Made by a program: the position numbers and the translations under genes. Source: Octopus sinensis (lineage: Eukaryota). Taken from it: DNA of 64,000 nucleotides. Below, piece by piece: positions 1 to 63,599 of this stretch; the stretch's first letter is position 1; the number at the start of each line of letters is the position of its first letter. Location: positions 14,570,001 to 14,634,000 of the forward strand of contig NC_043025.1 of assembly GCF_006345805.1 (NCBI RefSeq), given 5' to 3'. The notes beneath the pieces were generated by a model. It did not search any database, had not been told where the DNA came from, and saw only the letters and a list, made by a program, of their open reading frames with translations.

Positions 1-300
1 AACCATTTTGTTGCACAATGCGTCTCCATCTTTCCTTTAACTTGAAAATACCCTCTTCCCAGAATTGAGGTGGTTTCACGGCAAAGAATTCATCAAGGTA
101 TCTTTTTACTTCATCCAAGGAATTGAAATTTTTACCATTAAGACTATTCTGCAGAGACTTGAATAAGTGGAAATCCGAAGGAGTAATAATATCTGGTGAA
201 TATGGAGGGTGGGGTAACACATCCCGGCCGAGCTGCAGCAATTTTTGTCTGGTTCCCAAAGCATCAAGTGCTGAAAATGAATTTCCTTTTCTTCCATTTT
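1..300 (-). mobile_element. Internally deleted mariner transposase remnant (N-terminal start fused to C-terminal region)
   Basis: Minus strand reads MEEKEIHFQHLML (mariner N-terminus-like). It then shifts frame into ...QKLLQLGRDVLPHPPYSPDIITPSDFHLFKSLQNSLNGKNFNSLDEVKRYLDEFF...WEEGIFKLKERWRRIVQQNG, containing the mariner YSPD(L)APSD motif region. It runs off the window start. Confidence 0.85.
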
Positions 301-4276: not shown

Positions 4277-4376
4277 NNNNNNNNNNNNNNNNNNNNNNNN
4301 NNNNNNNNNNNNNNNNNNNNNNNNNNNNNNNNNNNNNNNNNNNNNNNNNNNNNNNNNNNNNNNNNNNNNNNNNNNN
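4277..4376. other. Assembly gap (100 N)
   Basis: Run of N next to a (TA)-rich microsatellite. Confidence 0.99.
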
Positions 4377-33549: not shown

Positions 33550-34312
33550 TAGTTAAGGATGGTCTTTTATCCTTTTTTGCCAATTCAACACATACAGCAT
33601 TCATTTGCTCTTCATTCTTGCTTTTATTTCTATTATTTTTAGTGTATTTGTCAAAGCTGTTTCGTTACACCCTCTGTGACCTCATCTGGGACTCTTTGTC
33701 CTACGTGTCTCCTCTTGTCCTGCTTATTGCATTTTGTCCTTGTATGGATTGTATCTCTATCTGTGCTGGACTTTAAATCTGTGTGTTTCGTTCATGTGTC
33801 CTGAAGAGAAAATGCATTAAACAACATTCTTTACATCAATTCACTACAATTGGTGAAATGACATAATTAACATATTGTGTAACCATCATCAATCCCAGGT
33901 GAAAGGTGCACTTTCTCAGGTGATTCTTTTAAATAGCATACTACAAGGTTTTCATCTGAATCTTTTTTAACCAGATAAATTTTGCTTACATGTGATGTGG
34001 GTTCAAACCCCACAGCCTGCCTTCAACTTTTGCTATCCAGGTTTTTTTTTTTTGGCAATTCAAGATTAAGTCCAAACCGTTAACAATTAATTATATGTGT
34101 ATTCTTTTATTCTTTTACTTGTTTGTCATTTGACTGTGTCCTTGCTGGAGCACTGCCTTAAAGGGTTTCTTAATTGAAGAAATCGACCCCAGAACTTAGT
34201 CTTTGTAGGCTTAGTAGTTATCCTGTTGAACAGCAAAGTTACAGGGACATAAACACACTAACACCTGTTGTCAAACGATGATGGTGGGAACAGACAGACA
34301 AACATTTATATA

Positions 34313-39429: not shown

Positions 39430-39774
39430 CGTCCGTCGTCCGTCTGTCTTATATCGATATTATAGATGTTTGTATAATGATAATAAATCCCTTCTACTCT
39501 AGGCACAAGGCCTGAGATTCGGAGAAGAGGGCTAAGTGCAGACCTGGTACTTAATTTATCGACCCCCGAAAGGTTGAAAGGCAAAGTCAACCTCGGCAGA
39601 ATTTGAACTCACAACATAAGTACGGACGAAATGCCGCTAAGCAAATTTGTCCGGCGTGCTAACGATTCTGCCATCTCACTGCCTTAATAATAATAATAAT
39701 AACAATGGAGAGAATTACATTTCTGTACTTTCGGGATGTGTATACACACACACACACACACACACACGGTATTG

Positions 39775-40305
39775 TAGCAGCTGTGTGGACAGGTGCGAAT
39801 TAACATATTCGGTTAATGTGTGGGGGCGTACTCACAGGTGTCTTGTGTGTGTGTGTGCGGATCTCATTAACATAATGTAGTGTTGTGGCGATGACAGCAA
39901 CATTTCACTACCACAGAGGCGGCGGCGGCGTGTTGGTGGGTCATGCTGCTGACGGCGATGATGATGATGGAAGCGATGGATGTAGCAGCGGTCGTTGTTT
40001 CTGCCGGTGGTGGTGGTGGTGGTGGTGGTGGTAGTTGCCCTTGTAGTGTCAGTGGTGGTGGTGTCGCTGATGGTCGCGGTAGTAGTAGTAGCAGCAGAAG
40101 CGATGGTGGTGGTGGTGGTGGTGATGGCGGCAGTAACGGTGGTGGTGGTGGTAGTCCTGGTAGAGGCACTATTAGTGACGGCGGCGGTGCACAGGTGTTT
40201 TGATTAACGCAAGCCCTGAATACACACAGGTGTTGCCCGTGTCGGTTAATTAGCATATTTGCCGTTGCCAATTAGCATATTGGTTGGGTAATTAGCATAT
40301 TGGCT
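39775..40305. promoter_or_regulatory. Candidate neural enhancer: E-box cluster plus POU/octamer-like sites
   Basis: CAGCTG at 39778; CAGGTG at 39790, 39835, 40192 and 40227; AATTAGCATATT x3 at 40248, 40270 and 40290; variant AATTAACATATT at 39798. Function is inferred. Confidence 0.5.
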
Positions 40306-41749
40306 GCTATATGACATTAGCCACGTCAGCACTTTTATGGCTCAACGTTATTGGACTACTACCACCACCACCACTACATCTATTTTTACTACTGCTGCTA
40401 CTACTAAAACTACTAAACGAATTTTCGCTACTACTACTACTACTTCAGCTGTTGCTACCACAACTATTTCTACTACCACCAAGACACCACTACCACCTCC
40501 AAAATACTGGCGGTACCACATGTAATTCTAGTGCTCGTACTGCAACATGTACGCGACTTTTACCAGCACCACCACCCAAAATAGTGCTAGTACTACATAT
40601 TCTATTACTACCACTACAACTACTACCGCTACTGCAACAATTATTACTACTAATACTACTATTAGTTTCACCTATACTATTGTTACTAGTCTCCTAGCAT
40701 GTACACTGTTGTACTTGTGCCTATACTGCTGCGAAACTTAGCACAATATTACCACTTATAGGCATACGAGTGGCTGTGTGATAAGTAGCTTGCTTACGAA
40801 CCACATGGTTCCAGGTTCAGTCCCACTGCTTGGCACCTTGGGCAAGTGTCTTTTACTATAGCCTCGGGCCGACCAAGCCTTGTGAGTGGATTTGGTAGAT
40901 AGGAACTGAAAGAAGCCCGTCGTATATATATATATATATGTGTGTGTATATGTTTGTGTGTCTGTGTTTGTCCCCCCCCCCACCATAGCTTGACAACCAA
41001 TGTTGGTGTGTTTACGTCTCCGTAACTTAGCAGTTCAGCAAAAGACCCAAATAGAATGAGTACAAGGCTTACAAAGAATAAGTCCTGGGAGTGGATTTGT
41101 TTGACTAAAGGCGGTGCTCCAGCATGGCTGCAGCCATATGTCTGAGACAAATAAAAGAATATATATATAAACAATAAATGTCACCCTTTTCAAGCCTAGC
41201 CAAGCTCATGGGCCTGGTTTCCCGGTTTCTGTGGCATATGTGTTCCCCCCAGCTGGATGGGACGCCAGTCCATCGCAGCGTCACCCAAGAAACAGGAAGA
41301 GTGAGAGAAAGTTGGGGCAAAAGAGTACTAGAGGGGTTGCCACCACACCCTGCCGGAGCCACGTGGGGCTTTTAGGTGTTTTCGCGCAATAAACACACAC
41401 AACGCTCAGTCTGGGAATCGAAACTGCGATCCTCCGACCGCGAGTCCGCTGCCCTAACCACTGGGCCATTACACCTCCATATATATATATATCATATATA
41501 CATACACACGTCCAGACCTCTCATACGCACTAATACTCTCTCATACACACACACACACTCTTCTCATACACTCACACACACTCTTATGTTGGAGCGAGGT
41601 CATTTAACCCTATTATCTCCCCTAATTTTGCTCTTGCGTCTCACGTTTGATCTTTGACTTCTGGCCGAAATCAGATCGCCATGTTGATTCGCTAGCCTCT
41701 GCACGCATATCTTTTTCTCTCCTTCTTTCTGTGTTTTTTCTCTGTGTAT

Positions 41750-41785
41750 CTTTCTGTTGAAGAGCGTAGGCTCGAAATGTTAAAG
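41750..41785 (+). ncRNA. Minimal hammerhead-like motif, GAGC family, degenerate
   Basis: CTTT-CTGTTGA-A-GAGC-gtag-GCTC-GAAA-TG-TT-AAAG (A6U; CG changed to TG in stem III). Confidence 0.55.
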
Positions 41786-41920
41786 ACTTGTTTTATTTAT
41801 ATTTCCTGAGCGCCATACTAATACAATTGTTTGTTTGTATTCCACCTGCCTTCGTCTTTTGTTTATTTCCGTAAACCTGCCTTCGTCTTTTGTCTATTTT
41901 CATAAAGCTTCCCGTTATAT

Positions 41921-41963
41921 TAGTCCGATGATGGGTTAACAGGCTGAAATTTCGAAGTCACTG
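41921..41963 (+). ncRNA. Minimal hammerhead motif, TTCGAA family, degenerate
   Basis: TAGT-CCGATGA-T-GGGTTAACAGGCT-GAAA-T-TTCGAA-G-TC-ACTG (U4C). A sister copy lies at ~11255-11290. Confidence 0.55.
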
Positions 41964-42527
41964 TCAGTAATGTCCTTGTTTAAGAATAATAAATTTGTAC
42001 TCTGCTTAAGAATAGAGAAAGTCATCAGATTAATGTAAAAGTGTTTTCATTCTAGGTGCAGGAGTGGCTGTGTGGTAAGGAGCTTGCTTCTCAGTCACAT
42101 GGTTATGGGTTCAATACCACTGTGTGGCATCTTGGGCAAGTACTAGAAGGAAACTGAAAAAAGCTCTTGGCGTGTGTGTGTGTATATATATATATATATA
42201 TCGCTTAACAACCGATGTCGGTGTGTTTACGTCCCCATAACTTAGTGGTTCGGCAAAAGAGACTGATAGAATAAGTTCTAGGCTTACAAAGAATAAGTCC
42301 TGGGGTTGATTTGCTCGACTAAAGGTGGTGCTCCAGCATGGTCACAGTTAAGTGACTGAAATCAATTAAAGAATATGTGTTTGTGTGTATATATGTATAA
42401 ATGTATGGTGTGGCTTTGTGGTAAGAAGCTTGCTTGCCAACCACATGGTTCCAGGTTCAGTTCCACTGCATGACACCTTCAGCAAGTGTCTTCTACTGTA
42501 TTGCAATACACACACACACACACATAT

Positions 42528-45944: not shown

Positions 45945-46416
45945 TTAAATATATATGTATATATATATATATATGTATATATACATACATATATATATAC
46001 ATACATATATATGTATATATACATACATATATATATGTATATATACATACATATATATATATATGTATATATACATATATATATGTATATATACATACAT
46101 ATATGTACATATATGTATATATACATACATATATATATATATATGTATATATACATACATATATATATATATATGTATATATACATACATATATATATAT
46201 GTATATATACATACATACATATATACATACATACATATATATATATGTATATATACATACATATATATATGTATATATACATACATATATATATGTATAT
46301 ATACATACATATATATATATACATACATATATATGTATATATACATACATATATATATGTATATATACATACATATATATATATGTATATATACTACATA
46401 TATATAATATGTATAT

Positions 46417-46483
<67 letters not shown>

Positions 46484-46485: not shown

Positions 46486-49271
46486 ATCTGTTTATATCGT
46501 ACTTAATCTAATGTTCGTCATGCTCTATACACTTCCAATACAAGGTTGTATTGAATATGTTTTTGTGCCACAAAATATACAAAACCCCACACACCATTGT
46601 CAGTCACATTTCTTTCAATCATTTTATATTTTTAGGGTACAGGTAGGGCTCTGGATGAGTAGTTAAGAACTTTGCTTTCCAGCCAGTTGGTTTTATGTTC
46701 GGCCCCTTTGGTTATTGCCTTTCATTGTAGCCCCAGGTCTTGTGAAGTTGTGTGGCTTCGGGGTAAGAGTATACAGTTCACAATCATGATTTTGCAAGTT
46801 CGATTCCTGGAAGTACAGAGTGTCCTTGAGTAAGATCCTTTATTTTCATGTTGCTCCTGTCCACTTGCGTCATTCTGAATCTCCCCAAGAACTTCATTAA
46901 GGGTACGTGTCCCTGTCAAGTGCTCCACTGCCCTCACATTAATTTCATGAGCAGGCTGTTTCATTAATTAGATGAACTAGAACTCTCATTATCATAACCG
47001 ATGGAATGTCAGCCCCAGGCTAACCAAACCTTTGTGAGCGGTTTGGTGGAAATTGAAAGAATCCCATCATGTGTGAGGGTATGCGTTTGGGTGTGTTTAG
47101 ATTTGTGCCTCTGAAAAAATCCCAAGCCCCAAATATTGTTGTTGTTACCCCTGTTATTAAATTATTCGTGGCTTTGCTCTTTCAAAAGCATGTGGAATAA
47201 GGGATCCCTTCTTGAAAAAAAAAACAGGTAAGGGTTTGTAATAGAAAGGGAATCTGGTTATAAATCAATGCCTTAGTTATATATTCATCTAACCCATGCC
47301 AGCATGGAAAAATGGGTGTGGCTGTGTGGTAAGTAGCTTCCTTCCTAACCACATGGTTCCAAGTTCAGTCCCACTGCATGATACCTTGGGCAAGTGTCTT
47401 TTACTATAGCCTCAGGCTGACCAAAGCCTTGTGAGTGGATTTGGTTGACGGAAACTGAAAGAAGCCCATCAAGGTGCATGTGTGTGTGTATATATGTATA
47501 TATATATATATATGGGGGCAGGTGTAGCTGTGTGGTAAGAAGCTTGTTCCCCAACCATATGGTTCCAGGTTCAGTCCCACTGCGTAACACCTTGGGCAAG
47601 TGTCTTCTACTATAACCTCAGGCTGACCAGTCTTGCAAGTGGATTTGGTAGACGAAAACTGAGAGAAACCCATCGTGTATGTATTTGATAACCAGTGTTG
47701 GTGTGTTTACGTCCCTGTAACTTAGTTCAGTAAAAGAGAATGATGAAGTACCAGGCTTAGAAATAAAAAAAAAATCCTGGGGTCAATTCTTTCAACTGAA
47801 AGTTCTGTATGGCCACAGTCTAATGACTGAAACAAAAACGGCAACATGGTTCACAACATGGCAACACCCCATGTTCTCCATTCACATCTGTCTTTGTCTC
47901 AATCACCAATCTCCTTCCTTTCATCCTGCTTGTAAACCAACTTAGCTACCCAGCCACCCTTAATTCTCTCTCCCTATTCTCTCTCATATACACCCCTTAT
48001 ACATTGACAATATACTCTGACACCCCACCTCCACTGTCGTTTCTCCCTTTCTAGTATCTCCTCATCAGCAAGACCCTTTTTCCCTGTCCTCCTATCCTAC
48101 TTTTGTCAGCCTCTCAACACCTGACACAAAGCCCCGACTTCTCAATACGACACCCAAGCTTGAAATGTCTTCGTGTTCTGAGTAAATTACTGACCTCGCT
48201 AGTGCTGGTGCCACACGAAGGGCACAGAATACAGCCTGTAAAGTGGTTAGCGTCAGGAAGGGTTCCGGCTGAAGAAGCCAAGCCAAAACCAGACAACTGG
48301 AACTGGATGCAATCGTCTGGTTGATTGAATTCTGTCGGATAAGTTAGCCTATGGCAGCATAGAAGACTGACCTTGGTTGGCGTTAGGGAGCGCTTCCAGC
48401 TGAAGAAACCAAACCAGAAGCTGATGTTGCAGCACCACATGTCCTCTGGCTTAGCAGATTCTGTCGAACCATTTGGCTGATACCAGCATGGAAGAAGGAA
48501 GCACCATGAGAGAGGACGATGAATGAACACATTTGTAATCATTATTTCCTGATAAAGTATTTATCACACACTCACACGCACGTGTCTGTACATTTAGGTC
48601 ACAACAATCCTTTCTACTATGGGCACATGGCCTGAAATTTGGCCTTGGTGGGATTTGAACTCAGAAAGTAGAAATGGGTAAGATAGATATTTGTTACAAT
48701 GATGAAGTCAAACCAAATGATATTTTGAAGGCATTTAGGACATACAGGCGTGGCTGTGTGGTACGAAGCTTGCCTCCCAACCGTGTGGTTCCAGGTTCAG
48801 TCCCCCTGCATGGCATCTTGGCTAAATGTCTTCTACTATATCCTCAGGCCAACCAAATTCTTGTGAGTGGATTTGGTAGATGGAAACTGAAAGAAGCCTG
48901 TTCTGTGCTTGTCCCCCACCACTGCTTGACAACCGATGCTGGTGTGTTTATGTCTCTGTAACTTAGCGGTAAGGCAAAAGAGACCAATAGAATAAGTACA
49001 AGGCTTTTAGAAAATAAGTCCTGGAAGTCGATGCATTCGACTAAAAGTTCTTCAAGGCAGTGCCCCAGCATGGCCACAGTTTAATAACTTGAACAAGTAA
49101 AAAATATATATACACACACACATGCATACACATGTGTATATAAACCATAAAAAGTAAGGTGGTATGAGAGGTGAATATATTTAGTTAAGCATTTGATATT
49201 CTTAGGATTACAGCTATTTCGCAGCGTTCATCGTGTAATAATCTCAGTGTATAATAAATTGCTTACATGTC

Positions 49272-49368
49272 TGCACTAATACACATTATACACTAATACA
49301 CATTATACACATTATACACTAATATGCATTATACACTAATACACATTATACACTAATATGCATTATAC
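49272..49368. repeat. 17-bp minisatellite (TATACACTAATAYRCAT)n
   Basis: About 5 tandem units are visible directly. Confidence 0.85.
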
Positions 49369-51583: not shown

Positions 51584-53785
51584 TGTAAAGGTGTTAGCCA
51601 AGTGGTTGGCGCTTGTCATCGAGAAACTGGTCGACAACGCACAAACGTGCGCCGTGCCAGGCCGGAGCATCCATGACAACCTCCATCTGATGCGCTACAT
51701 CATAGACAGGGTAGTTAACGAACCTGGCATGGGTGGGGCCCTGATCAACTTGGATCAATCGAAAGCCTTCGATAGGGTAGACCATCGATACTTGGAGGCA
51801 GTCCTGAGAGCGGCTGGTTTCGGTCCCGTCTTCCGCGGCTGGATAGCTGCCTTGTACAGAGGCATCCGCTTGGTAATTCGCATAAATGGACATCTATCGA
51901 GACCTTTCGACATTGCACGTTCGGTCCGTCAGGGATGCCCCCTCTCGGCGCTTCTATATGTATTGACTCTTGAGCCACTACTGCGGAAGCTGGCGACTCT
52001 GAGGGGTATCCCGCGAGAATTGGGATGCGGGACGAGCGTGTTTGCATACGCGGACGACGTCACCGTCATAGTGTCAAGCCACGAGCACATCGAGCGGGTC
52101 ACTGAAAGACTACGAAGCGGTGACAGGAGCAAAAATCAACTGGGAAAAGTCAGTGGGCTTGCGGCTCGGCACCTGGAGAAGCAAGCCCATGCCGTCCACC
52201 AGTACCTCCGTCGTGGGACGCTGGACAGACGGCCCGGTTGAGTTGCTCGGGATCTGGTTCGGTCCGGACCTCCAAATGGAGAAGAACTGGAACGAGATAA
52301 CGAGTAGGGTGGTCACTCTTGCCCAGCAATGGGCCAAGAGGAAACTGTCCCTAAAAGGTCGGGCGGAGGTGGCGAACGCGTACATCGCGTCCATCATCTA
52401 CTATCACCTGACCCATGTCCCGACCCTACCATCACCAAACTAGAACGCATCCTCTTCCGCTTCTTGTGGAAAGGATGCGTCCCAATGGTCAGGCGATCTA
52501 TTTGCTGTCAACAACCGTTAAAAGGAGGGCTGGGCATGCCGTGGTTGATGATGCGCAGACACGCGCTGAGACTGCGACATCTCCGGCTCTATGTAGACGA
52601 CGGTGAACAGGTGTGGTCGCCGTTTGTGAGGCACGCATTCCCGCAACTTGTCTCCATGACTGAACTACAGTTGTGGATCAAAAAGAGGCCGAGGAAGGGC
52701 GAATGGCACCGCGAGTGTCGCGTTGCTCTCAAGCAACTCTGCCGTCCCGGGTCGACCTTGAGTGACTTCAACACAACCAAAGCATTCTATAGGGGATTAG
52801 TGGAGGGGAGGTACGACGATGATCTCGGGCAAACCTGGGCGTCGACGAGGAATACCTGACCCGCCTGTTTCAAACAACTTTCGGCCCGGGACCTATGGAC
52901 AACTTCCAGAGATCCCTGGCCTGGCGGTTCTACCGAGAAGTGCTACCCGTTCGGGATAAGCTCTATAGGCATGGCTCAAGAAACACGGGGCCGACCTGCC
53001 CGAGATGCGGGCAGAGCGACGAAACCGCTCTGCACGCAATTGTGCAGTGTCCAGCAATTTCCGGCCTGTGGGCTTATGTCGAACGACTGCTGTCACGTGT
53101 GGGACGTGTCGGTTTATCAGCCGAGTCTATCGTTAATATCGTCACGCCTCCTTCCTTCAAACGGGAAGGAAGAGCTATTTTTATCATACTTGTGGCTATG
53201 GCGAAAGAATGTATCTGGTGGACGCGCCTGAAAGGATTAGAGACAAACACTTTCCTCTCTGGTCAATCTCTCATCAACTTCTTCAAGTATCACTTGAAGA
53301 GGAAAGTGAGAGTAGAGAGGCAAGTTTTGTCTAGGGAATGTTTTAAAAAAAGATGGGTGAATGTAGCAAGGATGGCACGTATGAATGACAAAGCCACCTT
53401 GACTATGATTCTATGAACTGTAAAAATTAATACAGAGAGTTGCTTATTTGCAAGAAAAAATAAAAGAAAGAAATATAACATGTGACTTCATTGACCGAGG
53501 TTACTGTGGTCTTTTCCGTAGGCTTTTCTTTCCACGGGTAAACCTCACCTGTCCTCCCCTTTACACTTCATATTGACATTTCTGTGATTACTATCCCTAT
53601 TGATCAACTTTTTTTCCTCTCCCCTTTCCTTTTTTTTTTCTCTCTTCCCCCTTTTTTTTAAAAATCCTCCCCTTTTTTTGTCCTCTTTCTTTCCTTTTAC
53701 GATCCCTTTTGATCCCCCAAAAGAAAAGCTCTACCTTGTAATTTGTTCTGTCTGTGTGCAGCCCTGTGTGGCTAATAAAGAAACA
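51584..53785 (+). mobile_element. 5'-truncated Tx1/L1-clade LINE (RT plus zf-RVT), frameshifted
   Basis: RT motifs LDQSKAFDRVDH, VRQGCPLS and YADD (52047-52058); C-terminal CPRCGQSDETALHAIVQC. ORF pieces 51591-52241, 52120-52443, 52329-52859 and 52895-53416. The 3' UTR ends AATAAAGAAACA. 15-bp TSD TATCTTTACATCTAT at 51569-51583 and 53786-53800. Confidence 0.93.
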
Positions 53786-54066: not shown

Positions 54067-55354
54067 TTTTTGCTAGCAAAAACTAGAATTCCTCCAATAT
54101 TCCTTTAGCCATTACTATATATATATATTTTGTTTCAGTCATTTGACTACAAGCCATGCTGGAGCACCGCCTTTAGTCGAATAAATCGACTTATTCTTTG
54201 TAAGCCTAGTACTTATTCTGTTGGTAAACACACCAGCATCAGTTGTCAAGTGATGGTGGTGGACATACACTGATGCACAAACATACACACACACACATAT
54301 ATATGTATATATACATGACAGGCTACTTCCAGTTTCCGTCTACCAAATCCACTCACAAGGCTTTGGTCAGCCTGAGGCCATAGTAGAAGACACTTGCCCA
54401 ACGCGCCATGCAGTGGGACTGAACCCGGAACCATGTGGCTGGTAAGCAAGCTACTTACCACACCACCACTCCTGCACTTTATATATATATATACATACAC
54501 GAGAGAGAGAAGTATAGATTGTTTGAGGTTGTATACAGATTTTATATATTAAGAAAAAAGGAGCGTGTCAAGATTTGGGCAAAGACTATTTTTCCGTTCA
54601 TCCTATCAGGGTCGATTAAATATACCAGTTACGCACTGGTGTTGATGTAATCGATTTAATCCTGTTGTCTGTCCCCTCTATGTTCAGCCCCCTGTGAGCA
54701 ACGAAGAAGCAATTATCAGAAATTTTAACAAATTCTGGGGTCGATATAATCAACTTAATCCCTTTCTCTGTTCTTGTTTGTCCCCTCTATGTTTAGCCCC
54801 TTGTGGGCAATAAAGAAATAAGAAACTAGAACAAAACAGCACCCCTACTTGCCAGCTCTGCTCAAACTGCCCAAGCCATGCCAACATGGACAATGCACAT
54901 TAAATGATGATATGCACACACACATACATACACTATTGTTAGGAAGGGCATCTGGCCATAGAAACCAATGCCAAAGCAGACTAGAGGGAATAGGGACCAC
55001 TCACCACTGCCGACTCTATGCCAGGAAAATTGATTGATAAATAATTTATTCGTTTTATAACAGTATCAGAAATTTATTAAAAGATTAATCTTAATACATG
55101 GCTAGAATGAAAAAAAAAAAAAAATAAAGCTGAACTTTTAAAATTCGAAACATTATCAGAAATTTAAATTCTGCCGAGGTCGACTTTTCCGTTCATCTTT
55201 TCGGTGGTTGATAAATTAAGTACCAGTTATGCACTGGGGTTGATGTAATTGATTTAATCCCGTTGTCTATCCTTGTTTGTCCACTCTATGTTCAGACATT
55301 AAATGATGATGATGAAAATTGATGCTAACGATGTTTTTGTTTTGCATATTTCAG

Positions 55355-55572
55355 GTATGAATGGAACGCATTCACCTCTCGGTCTGAACGGCCGCACTCC
55401 ATCACCTCCTGGCTCAATGCCCAATGCAGTATCAACACAACAGCTGCCACCTGCGTGTGGCGCCCGGCAACTGAGCAAGTTAAAACGGTTCCTGACCACG
55501 CTACAGCAGTTTGGTTCAGACATCTCTCCCGACATCGGGGAGCGTGTACGGACGTTAGTCCTCGGTCTTGTG
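55355..55572 (+). CDS. CBFA2T1: MTG/ETO/nervy family corepressor, exon with start of TAFH (NHR1) domain
   Basis: ttcag| ... [73 protein letters not shown] |gtacgt. Near-identical to the ETO/RUNX1T1 [26 protein letters not shown] segment. Phase 1 to phase 0. Confidence 0.95.
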
Positions 55573-55764
55573 GTACGTATTGATTGACCGTCTGTCTTTT
55601 CTCTTAATTATTGTCGTGATTCTGGTGGTTGTTGCTGTTTCTTTTAACCCCAGGTCAGTGGTCTGTTGTAGTTGACCCATGATTGAAGCAGTTCAGGATG
55701 TTATCATCCCACCTTTTCTTTTTTCCATGAGATGCACAATTATGTATTATGTATACATTTCTTG

Positions 55765-60302: not shown

Positions 60303-60392
60303 AATTCCCATTTGTCCATTGAAGAGTTCCATGCCAAACTGCAGGAGGCTACCAACTTCCCACTTCGACCATTCGTTATTCCATTTCTCAAG
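60303..60392 (+). CDS. CBFA2T1: MTG/ETO/nervy exon, TAFH domain middle
   Basis: tttgtag| [30 protein letters not shown] |gtcatt; 90 nt, phase 0-0. Missed by the ORF track. Confidence 0.96.
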
Positions 60393-62235: not shown

Positions 62236-62527
62236 CAAGGCATGTTGTTATTATTATTTAGATAGGGTGAAGAGCCAAGCTGTGTCCTCTTAAAGCACCT
62301 CTACTTATTCCAATCCGTGTGTAGGTGTTATTATTTCTGTGAGGAGTGCATATAAGAGTTGAAAATGCGGGAAAATATTGTCTGCAGAGTAATTATACAC
62401 CTCTCTCGACCCACCTGTCTATCTAACCTTCTCTCTCCTTACCTGTATCCATTCTGTTTGTTTCTCTCGTTCTCGCTTTCTTTCACACCTGACATTAACA
62501 CTTTCTCTCTTTCCTATATTGTTCCAG

Positions 62528-62709
62528 GCCAACTTACCTCTGCTCCAAAGGGAACTCCTACACTGTGCCCGCATGGCCAAACAGACCCCCCAGCAGTACC
62601 TCGCACAGAACGAACACATCCTCTTCGATACGTCCAACTCCCCCGTTGAGTCACATGACTCACTGTCTTCAGAGTTCAACGAGAATGGCAAACGAAGATC
62701 ACCTGACAG
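62528..62709 (+). CDS. CBFA2T1: MTG/ETO/nervy exon, end of TAFH domain and NLS region
   Basis: ttccag| [60 protein letters not shown](R) |gtaagc; 182 nt, phase 0-2. Confidence 0.96.
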
Positions 62710-63336: not shown

Positions 63337-63599
63337 ACCAACGAAGGAGAACGGCAGCGACAGTCACATGGATACGCTCCACTCGGCAAAGCGCCACCCA
63401 AGCATGAGCCCCCTGGGCAACAACCGTATCAGTCCAAACGGCATGGTGAACCTGAACTCTGGTGGACCTATCCGCCTCGGAGACATCAGTCTGTCGAGGG
63501 AACTGCGAGAGCGTGAACGGTTGGAACAGGAAAGGATAGAAAGGGAACGAGCCGAGCGTGACAGGGAGCGAGATAGGGATCGACACTATCCAAGTTACA
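63337..63599 (+). CDS. CBFA2T1: MTG/ETO/nervy exon between NHR1 and NHR2
   Basis: ttccag| (R)PTKENGSDSHMDTLHSAKRHPSMSPLGNNRISPNG...RELRERERLEQERIERERAERDRERDRDRHYPSY |gtgagt; phase 2 to phase 1. TKENG, KR and SPNG match the ETO family. The gene continues beyond the window. Confidence 0.9.

What the first reader, a model, noticed from the sequence alone, without database searches (positions are those of the whole stretch)
39775..40305. Triple AATTAGCATATT (POU/octamer-like) plus five E-boxes: putative proneural-POU enhancer of nervy/MTG
Seen: an exact 12-mer repeats three times at 22- and 20-bp spacing (about two helical turns) with different spacers, so it is not a simple tandem duplication. 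A fourth variant, AATTAACATATT (39798), sits next to CAGGTG (39790). Established (recalled): TATGC(A/T)AAT is a POU2/POU3 site; Ascl1 and Brn proteins co-activate neurogenic targets through E-box plus ATT(A/T)NCAT octamer sites; nervy/MTG genes are proneural targets. ACAGGTG also fits Snail/Scratch repressors. Inference: a cephalopod neurogenesis enhancer using the same bHLH-POU logic.
Basis: partly seen in the sequence, partly recalled or inferred. Interest (0 to 1): 0.75.

Follow-up and report, generated by a model that had tools for sequence, protein, structure and literature searches.

The report
Candidate POU/E-box regulatory module near MTG
Three exact copies of a consensus POU-factor binding site, with nearby E-boxes, sit in a single-copy DNA island about 15 kb upstream of a recognisable exon of an octopus-like MTG/nervy gene; this is a reasonable but untested candidate enhancer, not a demonstrated one.

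Summary
AATTAGCATATT occurs exactly at 40248, 40270 and 40290. The variant AATTAACATATT is at 39798. Four CAGGTG boxes and one CAGCTG box lie in the interval. On the minus strand each 12-mer contains ATGCTAAT, the published POU octamer consensus. The gene call is also right: TAFH/NHR1 exons of an MTG/nervy gene lie on the + strand from 55.4 kb.

The motifs sit in a 933-bp island (39768-40700) that is single-copy in the window. It lies between two SINE copies that have 24 and 44 other matches in the window. ACAGGTG-N(3-5)-ATTAAC occurs twice in the window, both times here. CpG density is raised.

The claim that the array is not a tandem duplication is overstated. The spacers share a GTTG core, so an old triplication of about 21 bp fits. 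Neutral drift would leave a 12-nt block intact in about 1.5-3% of simulations, which is suggestive only.

I could not test conservation, genome-wide copy number, chromatin state, the transcription start or the target gene. No octopod DNA was reachable.

Verdict: a plausible cis-regulatory module of a known kind. The bHLH-POU logic and the link to nervy remain inference. Interest is modest.

The parts
40248..40301 (-). Array of three exact 12-mers, AATTAGCATATT on the + strand and AAT-ATGCTAAT-T on the minus strand. Each holds a consensus POU octamer. Start-to-start spacing is 22 and 20 bp, about two helical turns.
   Evidence: octamer consensus from PMC5314778 and PMC11564870
40313..40328 (+). 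Degenerate fourth unit ACATTAGCCACG, overlapping the CRE/ATF-like sequence CCACGTCA (40321-40328).
   Evidence: ATTAGC occurs 4 times here against 0.15 expected
40185..40345 (+). Block B. It reads CACAGGTGT (40190), ATTAAC (40203), CACAGGTGT (40225), GTTAAT (40245), then the octamer array with ATTGG (inverted CCAAT) at 40279 and 40299.
39775..39880 (+). Block A. It reads CAGCTG (39778), ACAGGTG (39789), CGA, then AATTAACATATT (39798; ATGTTAAT on the minus strand, one mismatch in the POU-specific half), GTTAAT (39812), CACAGGTGT (39833) and ATTAAC (39866).
39906..40184 (+). Imperfect trinucleotide tract rich in GGT, AGT and GGC. GC is 0.59 and CpG o/e is 0.98. It is weakly complementary to the right arm.
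40346..40700 (+). Imperfect trinucleotide tract rich in ACC, ACT and GCT, the complement type of the left arm.
39768..40700 (.). The whole island. It is single-copy within the 64-kb window and lies between an (AC)12 run after a SINE tail on the left and a SINE copy on the right.
   Evidence: the island matches only itself, the left flank has 24 other matches and the right flank has 44
55411..55572 (+). First recognisable exon of the MTG/nervy (CBFA2T-like) gene, at the start of the TAFH/NHR1 domain. Further exons are at 60303-60392, 62525-62707 and 63344-63553. This is the presumed but unproven target gene.

Best explanation
The 933-bp single-copy island at 39768-40700 is most likely a cis-regulatory module, either an enhancer or an alternative promoter. 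Its core is a same-strand array of three consensus POU octamers (ATGCTAAT), phased about two helical turns apart. A POU-class factor would bind each unit through its POU-specific domain on ATGC and its homeodomain on TAAT. The array sits beside ACAGGTG boxes that bHLH activators or Snail/Scratch/ZEB-type repressors could read, and beside ATTAAC/GTTAAT homeodomain-type half-sites. The same vocabulary recurs 400 bp upstream in block A.

Shown here: the motifs, their exactness, their phasing, their local enrichment, uniqueness within the window, and raised CpG content. Inferred: that proteins bind, which proteins they are, that the module acts in neurogenesis, and that the MTG/nervy gene 15 kb downstream is the target.
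For: The three 12-mers are exact, and only those 12 nt are shared. Each contains ATGCTAAT, given in the literature as the POU consensus, with POU-specific on ATGC and POU-homeodomain on TAAT. The spacers differ in sequence and length, and about 8 mutational events all fall outside the 12-mer. A neutral model reproduces this in 1.5-3.4% of simulations. By contrast, all 24 metagenome loci that carry a pair of this 12-mer are tandem repeats whose spacers are identical or nearly so wherever they can be compared. CAGGTG occurs 4 times against about 0.45 expected, always on the same strand, and 3 of the window's 4 CACAGGTGT lie here. ACAGGTG-N(1-12)-ATTAAC occurs twice in the window, both times here, against 0.05 expected, and 0 of 100 shuffles reach 2. 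Blocks A and B are the top-scoring 300-bp windows for the three motif classes together. The island is single-copy in the window while both flanking SINEs are multi-copy. CpG o/e is 0.72-0.98 against 0.49 window-wide, and CpG density is the highest outside a LINE. The nearest recognisable gene is MTG/nervy on the + strand. Drosophila nervy has a reporter-tested E-box-rich neural precursor enhancer.
Against: There is no evidence of conservation, open chromatin, transcription or protein binding. The spacers share a GT(Y)G core, so the array can be an old tandem triplication, and the constraint statistic is only marginal and was chosen after seeing the data. The motif cluster was picked by eye from 64 kb, so its enrichment p-values are inflated. 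The E-boxes are mostly CAGGTG rather than the CAGCTG that is prominent in the Drosophila nervy enhancer. CANNTG as a class is not enriched. The region is embedded in trinucleotide microsatellite, where slippage and small duplications are frequent. CpG enrichment is partly produced by the GGC/GCG repeats themselves. The target gene is assumed from proximity alone, and upstream exons of the gene were not located.
Confidence: 0.45

Rival explanations
1. The array is a neutral relic: a decaying minisatellite of about 21 bp (three to four units) inside a microsatellite-rich stretch. On this reading the intact 12-mer matches a transcription-factor consensus only by chance, and blocks A and B are leftovers of a local duplication.
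For: The pre-12-mer spacers align as GTCGGTT, GTTGCC and GTTGGGT, and units 1 and 3 are 86% identical over 22 nt (D13). A degenerate fourth unit follows. All motifs lie on one strand, as duplication would produce. The surrounding sequence is dense in simple repeats. The same 12-mer occurs as plain tandem repeats in unrelated metagenome DNA. A neutral model is not firmly rejected (p 0.015-0.035).
Against: TRF does not call an array here even at score 30. Identity stops exactly at the 12-mer edges in all three copies, whereas the window's true minisatellites yield 14-27 overlapping shared 12-mers. The spacers differ in length as well as sequence. The preserved block is an exact consensus octamer. 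The ACAGGTG-ATTAAC composite is independently enriched.
Confidence: 0.27
2. The island is a core promoter with a first, possibly non-coding, exon of MTG/nervy or of an unannotated transcript. The octamers and inverted CCAAT boxes (ATTGG at 40279 and 40299) would act as proximal promoter elements upstream of a weak TATA-like CTATATG (40306) and a CRE-like CCACGTCA (40321). This is a special case of the best explanation.
For: CCAAT/ATTGG occurs 4 times against 0.9 expected, a CCACGTCA is present, and the octamers lie within 100 bp of them. CpG density and GC are raised. The Drosophila nervy enhancer lies 90 bp from its start site. No N-terminal coding exon was found elsewhere in the 55 kb upstream of the TAFH exon.
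Against: No transcript evidence is available. No conserved MPDSP-type N-terminal exon was found here or anywhere in the window. The ORFs in the island have no Pfam family and no database relatives. The TATA and CCAAT matches are weak, and their flanks fit the NF-Y consensus (recalled from memory) poorly.
Confidence: 0.13
3. The island is part of a low- or middle-copy transposable element, for example a foldback or MITE-like element whose inverted arms are the GGT-rich and ACC-rich tracts. The motif array would then be internal element sequence.
For: The left arm against the reverse complement of the right arm gives a local alignment score of 43, compared with 29 +/- 4.7 for triplet shuffles, and 4 of 300 shuffles reach it. 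The order (TAG)n, (CAG)2, (GTG)n is shared. The genome is rich in transposable elements.
Against: There is no second copy in the 64 kb, whereas the SINE families show 24-44 matches. Arm similarity is weak and could be a low-complexity effect. I saw no defined terminal repeats or target-site duplications. No transposase was found.
Confidence: 0.1

Closest known systems
Homotypic clusters of POU octamer sites (ATGCAAAT/ATGCTAAT) in enhancers and promoters bound by class II/III/V POU factors
   Same: Each unit carries the exact ATGCTAAT consensus, with an ATGC half and a TAAT half. Several copies lie on the same strand at helical-turn spacing.
   Different: Binding was not tested. The conserved unit is 12 nt, longer than the octamer. 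No Sox site (CATTGT) adjoins any copy, so this is not a canonical Sox/Oct composite. Which cephalopod POU class would bind is unknown.
Drosophila nervy neural-precursor enhancer (Brody et al. 2008, PMC2529316)
   Same: It belongs to the same gene family (MTG/nervy). It is a cluster of E-boxes with homeodomain-type sites and a CATATTT element, which also occurs in the first 12-mer plus the next base here. It drives neuroblast and sensory organ precursor expression.
   Different: The fly element lies 90 bp from the start site, relies on three conserved CAGCTG boxes, is conserved across the Drosophila test species compared, and was tested with a reporter. The octopus block has one CAGCTG and four CAGGTG, its position relative to the start site is unknown, its conservation is unknown, and no octamer is reported in the fly element.
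Ascl1(Mash1)/Brn composite motif of vertebrate neurogenic targets (Castro et al. 2006, Dev Cell 11:831; its existence is cited, but the paper is not held, so motif details are recalled only)
   Same: An E-box of CAGSTG type lies close to an octamer-like ATT(A/T)NCAT. Block A reads CAGGTG-CGA-ATTAACAT.
   Different: Only block A has the close juxtaposition, and its octamer half is the mismatched variant. The exact triplet lies 15 nt from the nearest E-box. The spacing rule could not be verified, and neither cooperative binding nor conservation was tested.
Ordinary minisatellite or tandem repeat
   Same: It has three to four head-to-tail units of 20-25 bp on one strand, in a repeat-rich region. 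The same 12-mer forms plain tandem repeats in unrelated DNA.
   Different: The spacers differ in sequence and length while the 12-mer is exact. TRF does not call it. Only one 12-mer is shared, not a sliding series.

Membership tests
POU octamer binding-site cluster | Sequence matches the octamer consensus ATGC(A/T)AAT | tested here: met
   Each 12-mer reads AAT-ATGCTAAT-T on the minus strand, and ATGCTAAT is given as the consensus in PMC5314778 and PMC11564870. Of the 7 ATGCWAAT sites in the window, 3 are here.
POU octamer binding-site cluster | Bound by a POU-domain protein in vitro or in vivo | not testable with these tools
   This needs EMSA, DAP-seq or CUT&Tag with cephalopod POU factors.
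Ascl1/Brn-type composite element | CAGSTG E-box directly next to an octamer-like site at a fixed short distance | tested here: inconclusive
   Block A has CAGGTG (39790) followed after 3 nt by ATTAACAT (39799). The exact triplet is 15 nt from CAGGTG at 40227. The published spacing rule could not be read because the paper is not held.
Ascl1/Brn-type composite element | Evolutionary conservation of the composite and cooperative binding | not testable with these tools
   No octopod orthologous DNA was reachable.
Developmental enhancer (cis-regulatory module) | Local over-representation of several transcription-factor motif types in a few hundred bp of non-repetitive DNA | tested here: met
   CAGGTG occurs 4 times against 0.45 expected. 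The 12-mer and its variant occur 4 times against 0.05. ATTAAC/GTTAAT occurs 5 times against 0.29. The composite occurs twice against 0.05. These are the top clusters in the window, and the island is single-copy there. The region was selected after inspection, so this is supportive only.
Developmental enhancer (cis-regulatory module) | Sequence conservation, accessible chromatin and reporter activity | not testable with these tools
Drosophila-type nervy neural precursor enhancer | At least three conserved CAGCTG boxes next to the transcription start | tested here: not met
   There is only one CAGCTG (39778), and the other four boxes are CAGGTG. The start-site position is unknown. Definition from PMC2529316.
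Dispersed repeat or transposable element | Multiple similar copies elsewhere | tested here: not met
   The island matches only itself in the 64 kb, while the flanking SINEs have 24 and 44 other matches. Genome-wide copy number was not testable.
Simple tandem repeat or minisatellite | Head-to-tail units similar along their whole length | tested here: inconclusive
   TRF does not call it at score 30. The 12-mer is exact, but the spacers differ in length (10 and 8 nt) and share only a GT(Y)G core. A neutral model gives 1.5-3.4%.
CpG-island-like promoter | Raised GC and CpG o/e together with a transcription start | tested here: inconclusive
   CpG o/e is 0.72 for the island and 0.98 for the GGT arm, against 0.49 window-wide. 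GC is 0.47-0.59. No transcript data were available.

The most novel reading that the evidence does not exclude
The island could be a cephalopod regulatory element of MTG/nervy that reuses the bilaterian proneural-bHLH plus POU logic. It would be built as a helically phased array of three consensus octamers with ACAGGTG boxes read by activators or by Snail/Scratch repressors. If so, proneural control of MTG/nervy would be shared by flies, vertebrates and cephalopods despite independent brain elaboration. A more speculative addition is that the inverted (GGT)n and (ACC)n arms help keep the core nucleosome-free or form non-B DNA.
Probability: 0.15. Interest if true: 0.55.

Novelty: new member of a known kind. 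Interest (0 to 1): 0.3.

Why it matters
If the element is functional, it would be a compact and easily mutated candidate enhancer or promoter in a cephalopod, a group with very few characterised cis-regulatory elements. It would offer a direct test of whether the link between proneural or POU factors and MTG/nervy, seen in flies and vertebrates, also operates in octopus neurogenesis. As it stands it is a motif-based prediction, one of many that any large intron will yield, so its value lies in being cheap to test rather than in being surprising.

Tried and rejected
1. Fetching orthologous or same-species DNA failed. Exact look-ups of four window ORFs found nothing on record (39867-40271 minus strand, 40311-40697 +, 55303-55587 +, 48114-48542 minus strand).

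2. Two chimeric protein queries also found nothing. They were built from every open frame through the central block and the rest of the island, and the second included a 26-aa SINE piece as a positive control. The control also failed, so these negatives say nothing about conservation or copy number.

3. Logan contigs L001-L003, which carry a TAFH exon, come from a distant relative. Only the exon aligns, at 74%, so they are useless for non-coding comparison.

4. L004 is a chimeric transcript contig that joins the C-terminal part of an enzyme resembling an AMP-binding family member (my reading of the translation) to MTG. It located exons but no 5' exon.

5. A metagenome scan for paired 12-mers returned 24 unrelated tandem repeats and no orthologue.

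6. A search for an MPDSP-type N-terminal exon in the window found none.

7. An RNA or structural reading is rejected. There were no Rfam hits, and the central block folds no better than shuffles (z = 0.31).

8. A coding reading of the Thr-, Gly- or Pro-rich ORFs across the island is rejected. They are trinucleotide-repeat translations, open in several frames, with no Pfam family.

9. The Castro et al. 2006 paper could not be read, so the exact Ascl1/Brn motif grammar is recalled, not verified.

10. Two octopus brain-development papers do not mention CBFA2T, nervy or POU3.

Full report
**Observation.** AATTAGCATATT occurs exactly at 40248, 40270 and 40290 on the + strand. Start-to-start spacing is 22 and 20 bp, and the spacers are TGCCGTTGCC and GGTTGGGT. 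One-mismatch copies, AATTAACATATT, lie at 39798 and at 33865. At up to one mismatch the window holds 5 matches against 0.88 expected, and no shuffle out of 100 reaches 5. CAGCTG is at 39778, and CAGGTG is at 39790, 39835, 40192 and 40227, all on the + strand.

CAGGTG is enriched, with 4 seen against about 0.45 expected for the span. The extended form CACAGGTGT occurs four times in the window, three of them here. E-boxes as a class (CANNTG) are not enriched, with 5 seen against about 3.5 expected.

I listed all non-low-complexity exact 12-mers that occur three times within 100 bp. This locus is the only one in 64 kb apart from two true minisatellites (45973-46420 and 49274-49358). In those, 14-27 overlapping 12-mers are shared. 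Here exactly one is shared, so identity stops at the edges of the 12-mer.

**Context.** The window is eukaryotic and looks octopod. It is full of TA/CA microsatellites, SINE copies, a 100-N assembly gap (4277-4376) and a non-LTR retrotransposon (RVT_1 and zf-RVT at 51591-53416). Stop-free stretches at 55.3, 60.3 and 62.5 kb on the + strand encode the TAFH/NHR1 domain of an MTG/ETO/nervy protein. A tblastx with a Logan transcript places exons at 55411-55572, 60303-60392, 62525-62707 and 63344-63553.

The finding therefore lies about 15 kb 5' of the first recognisable exon, on the sense strand. I found no MPDSP-type N-terminal exon anywhere in the window. I cannot say whether the site is in a large intron or upstream of the gene.

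**Anatomy.** The motifs sit in a 933-bp island (39768-40700) that matches only itself in the window. Its left flank (39545-39710, ending in (TAA)n and followed by (AC)12) has 24 other matches in the window. Its right flank (about 40760-41170) has 44. Both are SINE-like. The island has four parts:

- Block A (39775-39880) reads CAGCTG, ACAGGTG, then after 3 nt AATTAACATATT, then GTTAAT, CACAGGTGT and ATTAAC.
- A GGT/AGT/GGC-rich trinucleotide tract runs from 39906 to 40184.
- Block B (40185-40345) reads CACAGGTGT, ATTAAC, CACAGGTGT, GTTAAT, then the three exact 12-mers. A degenerate fourth unit (ATTAGCCACGT at 40316) follows and overlaps CCACGTCA.
- An ACC/ACT-rich tract, the complement type of the left tract, runs from 40346 to 40700.

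ACAGGTG-N(1-12)-ATTAAC occurs twice in the window, once in each block, against 0.05 expected, and 0 of 100 shuffles reach 2. In a sliding 300-bp scan for ACAGGTG, octamer-like and ATTAAC/GTTAAT sites together, blocks A and B are the top windows of the whole 64 kb. CpG o/e is 0.72 over the island and 0.98 in the GGT tract, against 0.49 window-wide. CpG density is the highest outside the LINE. Part of that comes from the GGC/GCG repeats themselves.

**What the 12-mer is.** On the minus strand it reads AAT-ATGCTAAT-T. ATGCTAAT is given in the literature as the consensus POU octamer. The POU-specific domain contacts ATGC and the POU homeodomain contacts TAAT (PMC5314778, PMC11564870). The block-A variant, ATGTTAAT, has one mismatch in the POU-specific half. 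No Sox site adjoins any copy, so these are not canonical Sox/Oct composites. The second and third copies are followed by GG, which gives ATTGG (an inverted CCAAT). By my recollection of the NF-Y consensus, the flanks fit it poorly.

**Duplication or selection?** Three exact 12-mers within 54 bp cannot be chance, so they arose by duplication or were built by selection. That is too strong. The sequences before the 12-mers align as GTCGGTT, GTTGCC and GTTGGGT, and units 1 and 3 are 86% identical over 22 nt (D13). An old triplication or quadruplication of 21-23 bp is therefore plausible.

On that model about 8 substitution or indel events have accumulated, and all lie outside the 12-mer. I simulated 8 random events on a unit of 21-23 columns, allowing any phase. 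An intact block of at least 12 columns survives in 1.5-3.4% of runs. This suggests constraint on the 12-mer, but it is not decisive and the statistic was chosen after seeing the data.

There is one external contrast. A scan of metagenome contigs for two copies of the 12-mer 6-12 nt apart gave 24 loci. All are unrelated AT-rich tandem repeats whose spacers are identical or nearly so wherever they can be compared. The octopus arrangement is not of that simple kind. TRF does not report an array here even at score 30.

**Other readings.**

- RNA or structure: no Rfam family reaches threshold in the window. The central block folds no better than shuffles (z = 0.31).
- Coding: the Thr-, Gly- and Pro-rich ORFs across the island are translations of trinucleotide repeats, open in several frames. 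They have no Pfam family and no database relative.
- Foldback or transposable element: the two trinucleotide arms are weakly complementary. The local alignment score is 43, against 29 +/- 4.7 for triplet shuffles, and 4 of 300 shuffles reach it. They share the order (TAG)n, (CAG)2, (GTG)n. There is no second copy in the window, and I saw no terminal repeats or target-site duplication.
- Promoter: inverted CCAAT boxes, a weak TATA-like CTATATG, a CRE-like CCACGTCA and raised CpG content allow it. I have no transcript evidence.

**What could not be done.** None could be run. Exact look-ups of four window ORFs found nothing on record. Two protein searches with all open frames through the island found nothing. 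The second included a SINE piece as a positive control, and that also failed. Octopod genomic ORFs therefore appear to be absent from the collection, and the negatives carry no information. The TAFH-bearing Logan contigs I retrieved (L001-L003) align only in the exon, at 74%.

**Comparison with what is known.** The closest functional analogue in the same gene family is the Drosophila nervy neural-precursor enhancer. [quoted passage not shown] It also has a Pbx/Exd site, an Antp-class homeodomain site and a CATATTT element, and it is reporter-tested in neuroblasts and sensory organ precursors (PMC2529316). The octopus block shares the general vocabulary. It fails the defining CAGCTG-cluster feature, having one CAGCTG and four CAGGTG, and its position and conservation are unknown.

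The Ascl1/Brn composite of Castro et al. 2006 is a fair analogy for block A (CAGGTG-CGA-ATTAACAT). It fits the exact triplet poorly, because that lies 15 nt from its nearest E-box. I could not read that paper, so its grammar is recalled only. From my own knowledge, ACAGGTG fits E-protein and Achaete-Scute/Daughterless sites (RCAGSTG) and also Snail, Scratch and ZEB repressor sites. Sequence alone cannot separate these.

**Verdict.** The most likely reading is a cis-regulatory module built on a phased array of consensus POU octamers with ACAGGTG boxes (confidence 0.45). A promoter version of the same idea is rated separately at 0.13. A neutral decaying minisatellite remains a serious rival (0.27), and a low-copy transposable element a minor one (0.10). 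The specific claims are unproven inference: an Ascl-POU neurogenic enhancer, MTG/nervy as the target, and logic conserved with vertebrates. This is a new candidate of a known kind. It is cheap to test and is not surprising in itself, so I rate interest at 0.3.

Noticed in passing
window 33865-33942: A third, smaller cluster with the same vocabulary lies 6 kb upstream. It holds AATTAACATATT (33865), two CAGGTG (about 33897 and 33918, read from the sequence) and AAATAGCATACT (33931), all on the + strand. All three places in the window that carry the 12-mer or its one-mismatch variant have a same-strand CAGGTG within about 35 bp.
   Followed up: partly
window 39906-40184 and 40346-40700: The GGT/AGT-rich and ACC/ACT-rich trinucleotide tracts flank the motif core as weak inverted arms. 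The alignment score is 43 against 29 +/- 4.7 for triplet shuffles, and 4 of 300 shuffles reach it. The strand composition switches at the octamer array. The cause is unknown; it could be an old inverted duplication or a low-complexity coincidence.
   Followed up: partly
window 51591-53416: Non-LTR retrotransposon ORFs (RVT_1 and zf-RVT) on the + strand lie inside the presumed MTG intron. GC is 0.55-0.58 and CpG o/e is about 1.0, the most CpG-dense part of the window, which suggests a young insertion.
   Followed up: partly
window 39545-39710 and about 40760-41170: Two different SINE-like families bracket the island, with 24 and 44 other matches in the 64 kb. The window is heavily loaded with these elements.
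   Followed up: partly
window 45973-46420 and 49274-49358: These are true minisatellites. The first is a TA/CA-rich array and the second is built on CACTAATACACA-type units. They were the only other places where a non-low-complexity 12-mer recurs three times within 100 bp.
   Followed up: no
window 4277-4376: A run of 100 N, which is an assembly gap.
   Followed up: no
window 2-298 (minus strand): A stop-free stretch (…PHPPYSPDIITPSDFHLFKSLQNSLNGKNF…) looks by eye like the C-terminus of a mariner/Tc1-type transposase. Pfam gave no hit at E <= 0.01.
   Followed up: partly
L004 (Logan SRR6750464 contig, 978 nt): This transcript contig looks chimeric. Its first 330 nt encode the C-terminal part of an unrelated enzyme that by eye resembles the AMP-binding family, and the rest encodes MTG from the TAFH domain onward (90% identical to the window's exons).
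   Followed up: no
L005-L028 (metagenome contigs): The same 12-mer AATTAGCATATT recurs as the core of many unrelated AT-rich tandem repeats with periods of 16-24 in environmental DNA. Several are overlapping ATTAGCAT-type repeats.
   Followed up: partly
window 41400-42000: A second stretch with CpG o/e of about 1.06-1.09 lies just beyond the right-hand SINE. I did not examine it further.
   Followed up: no
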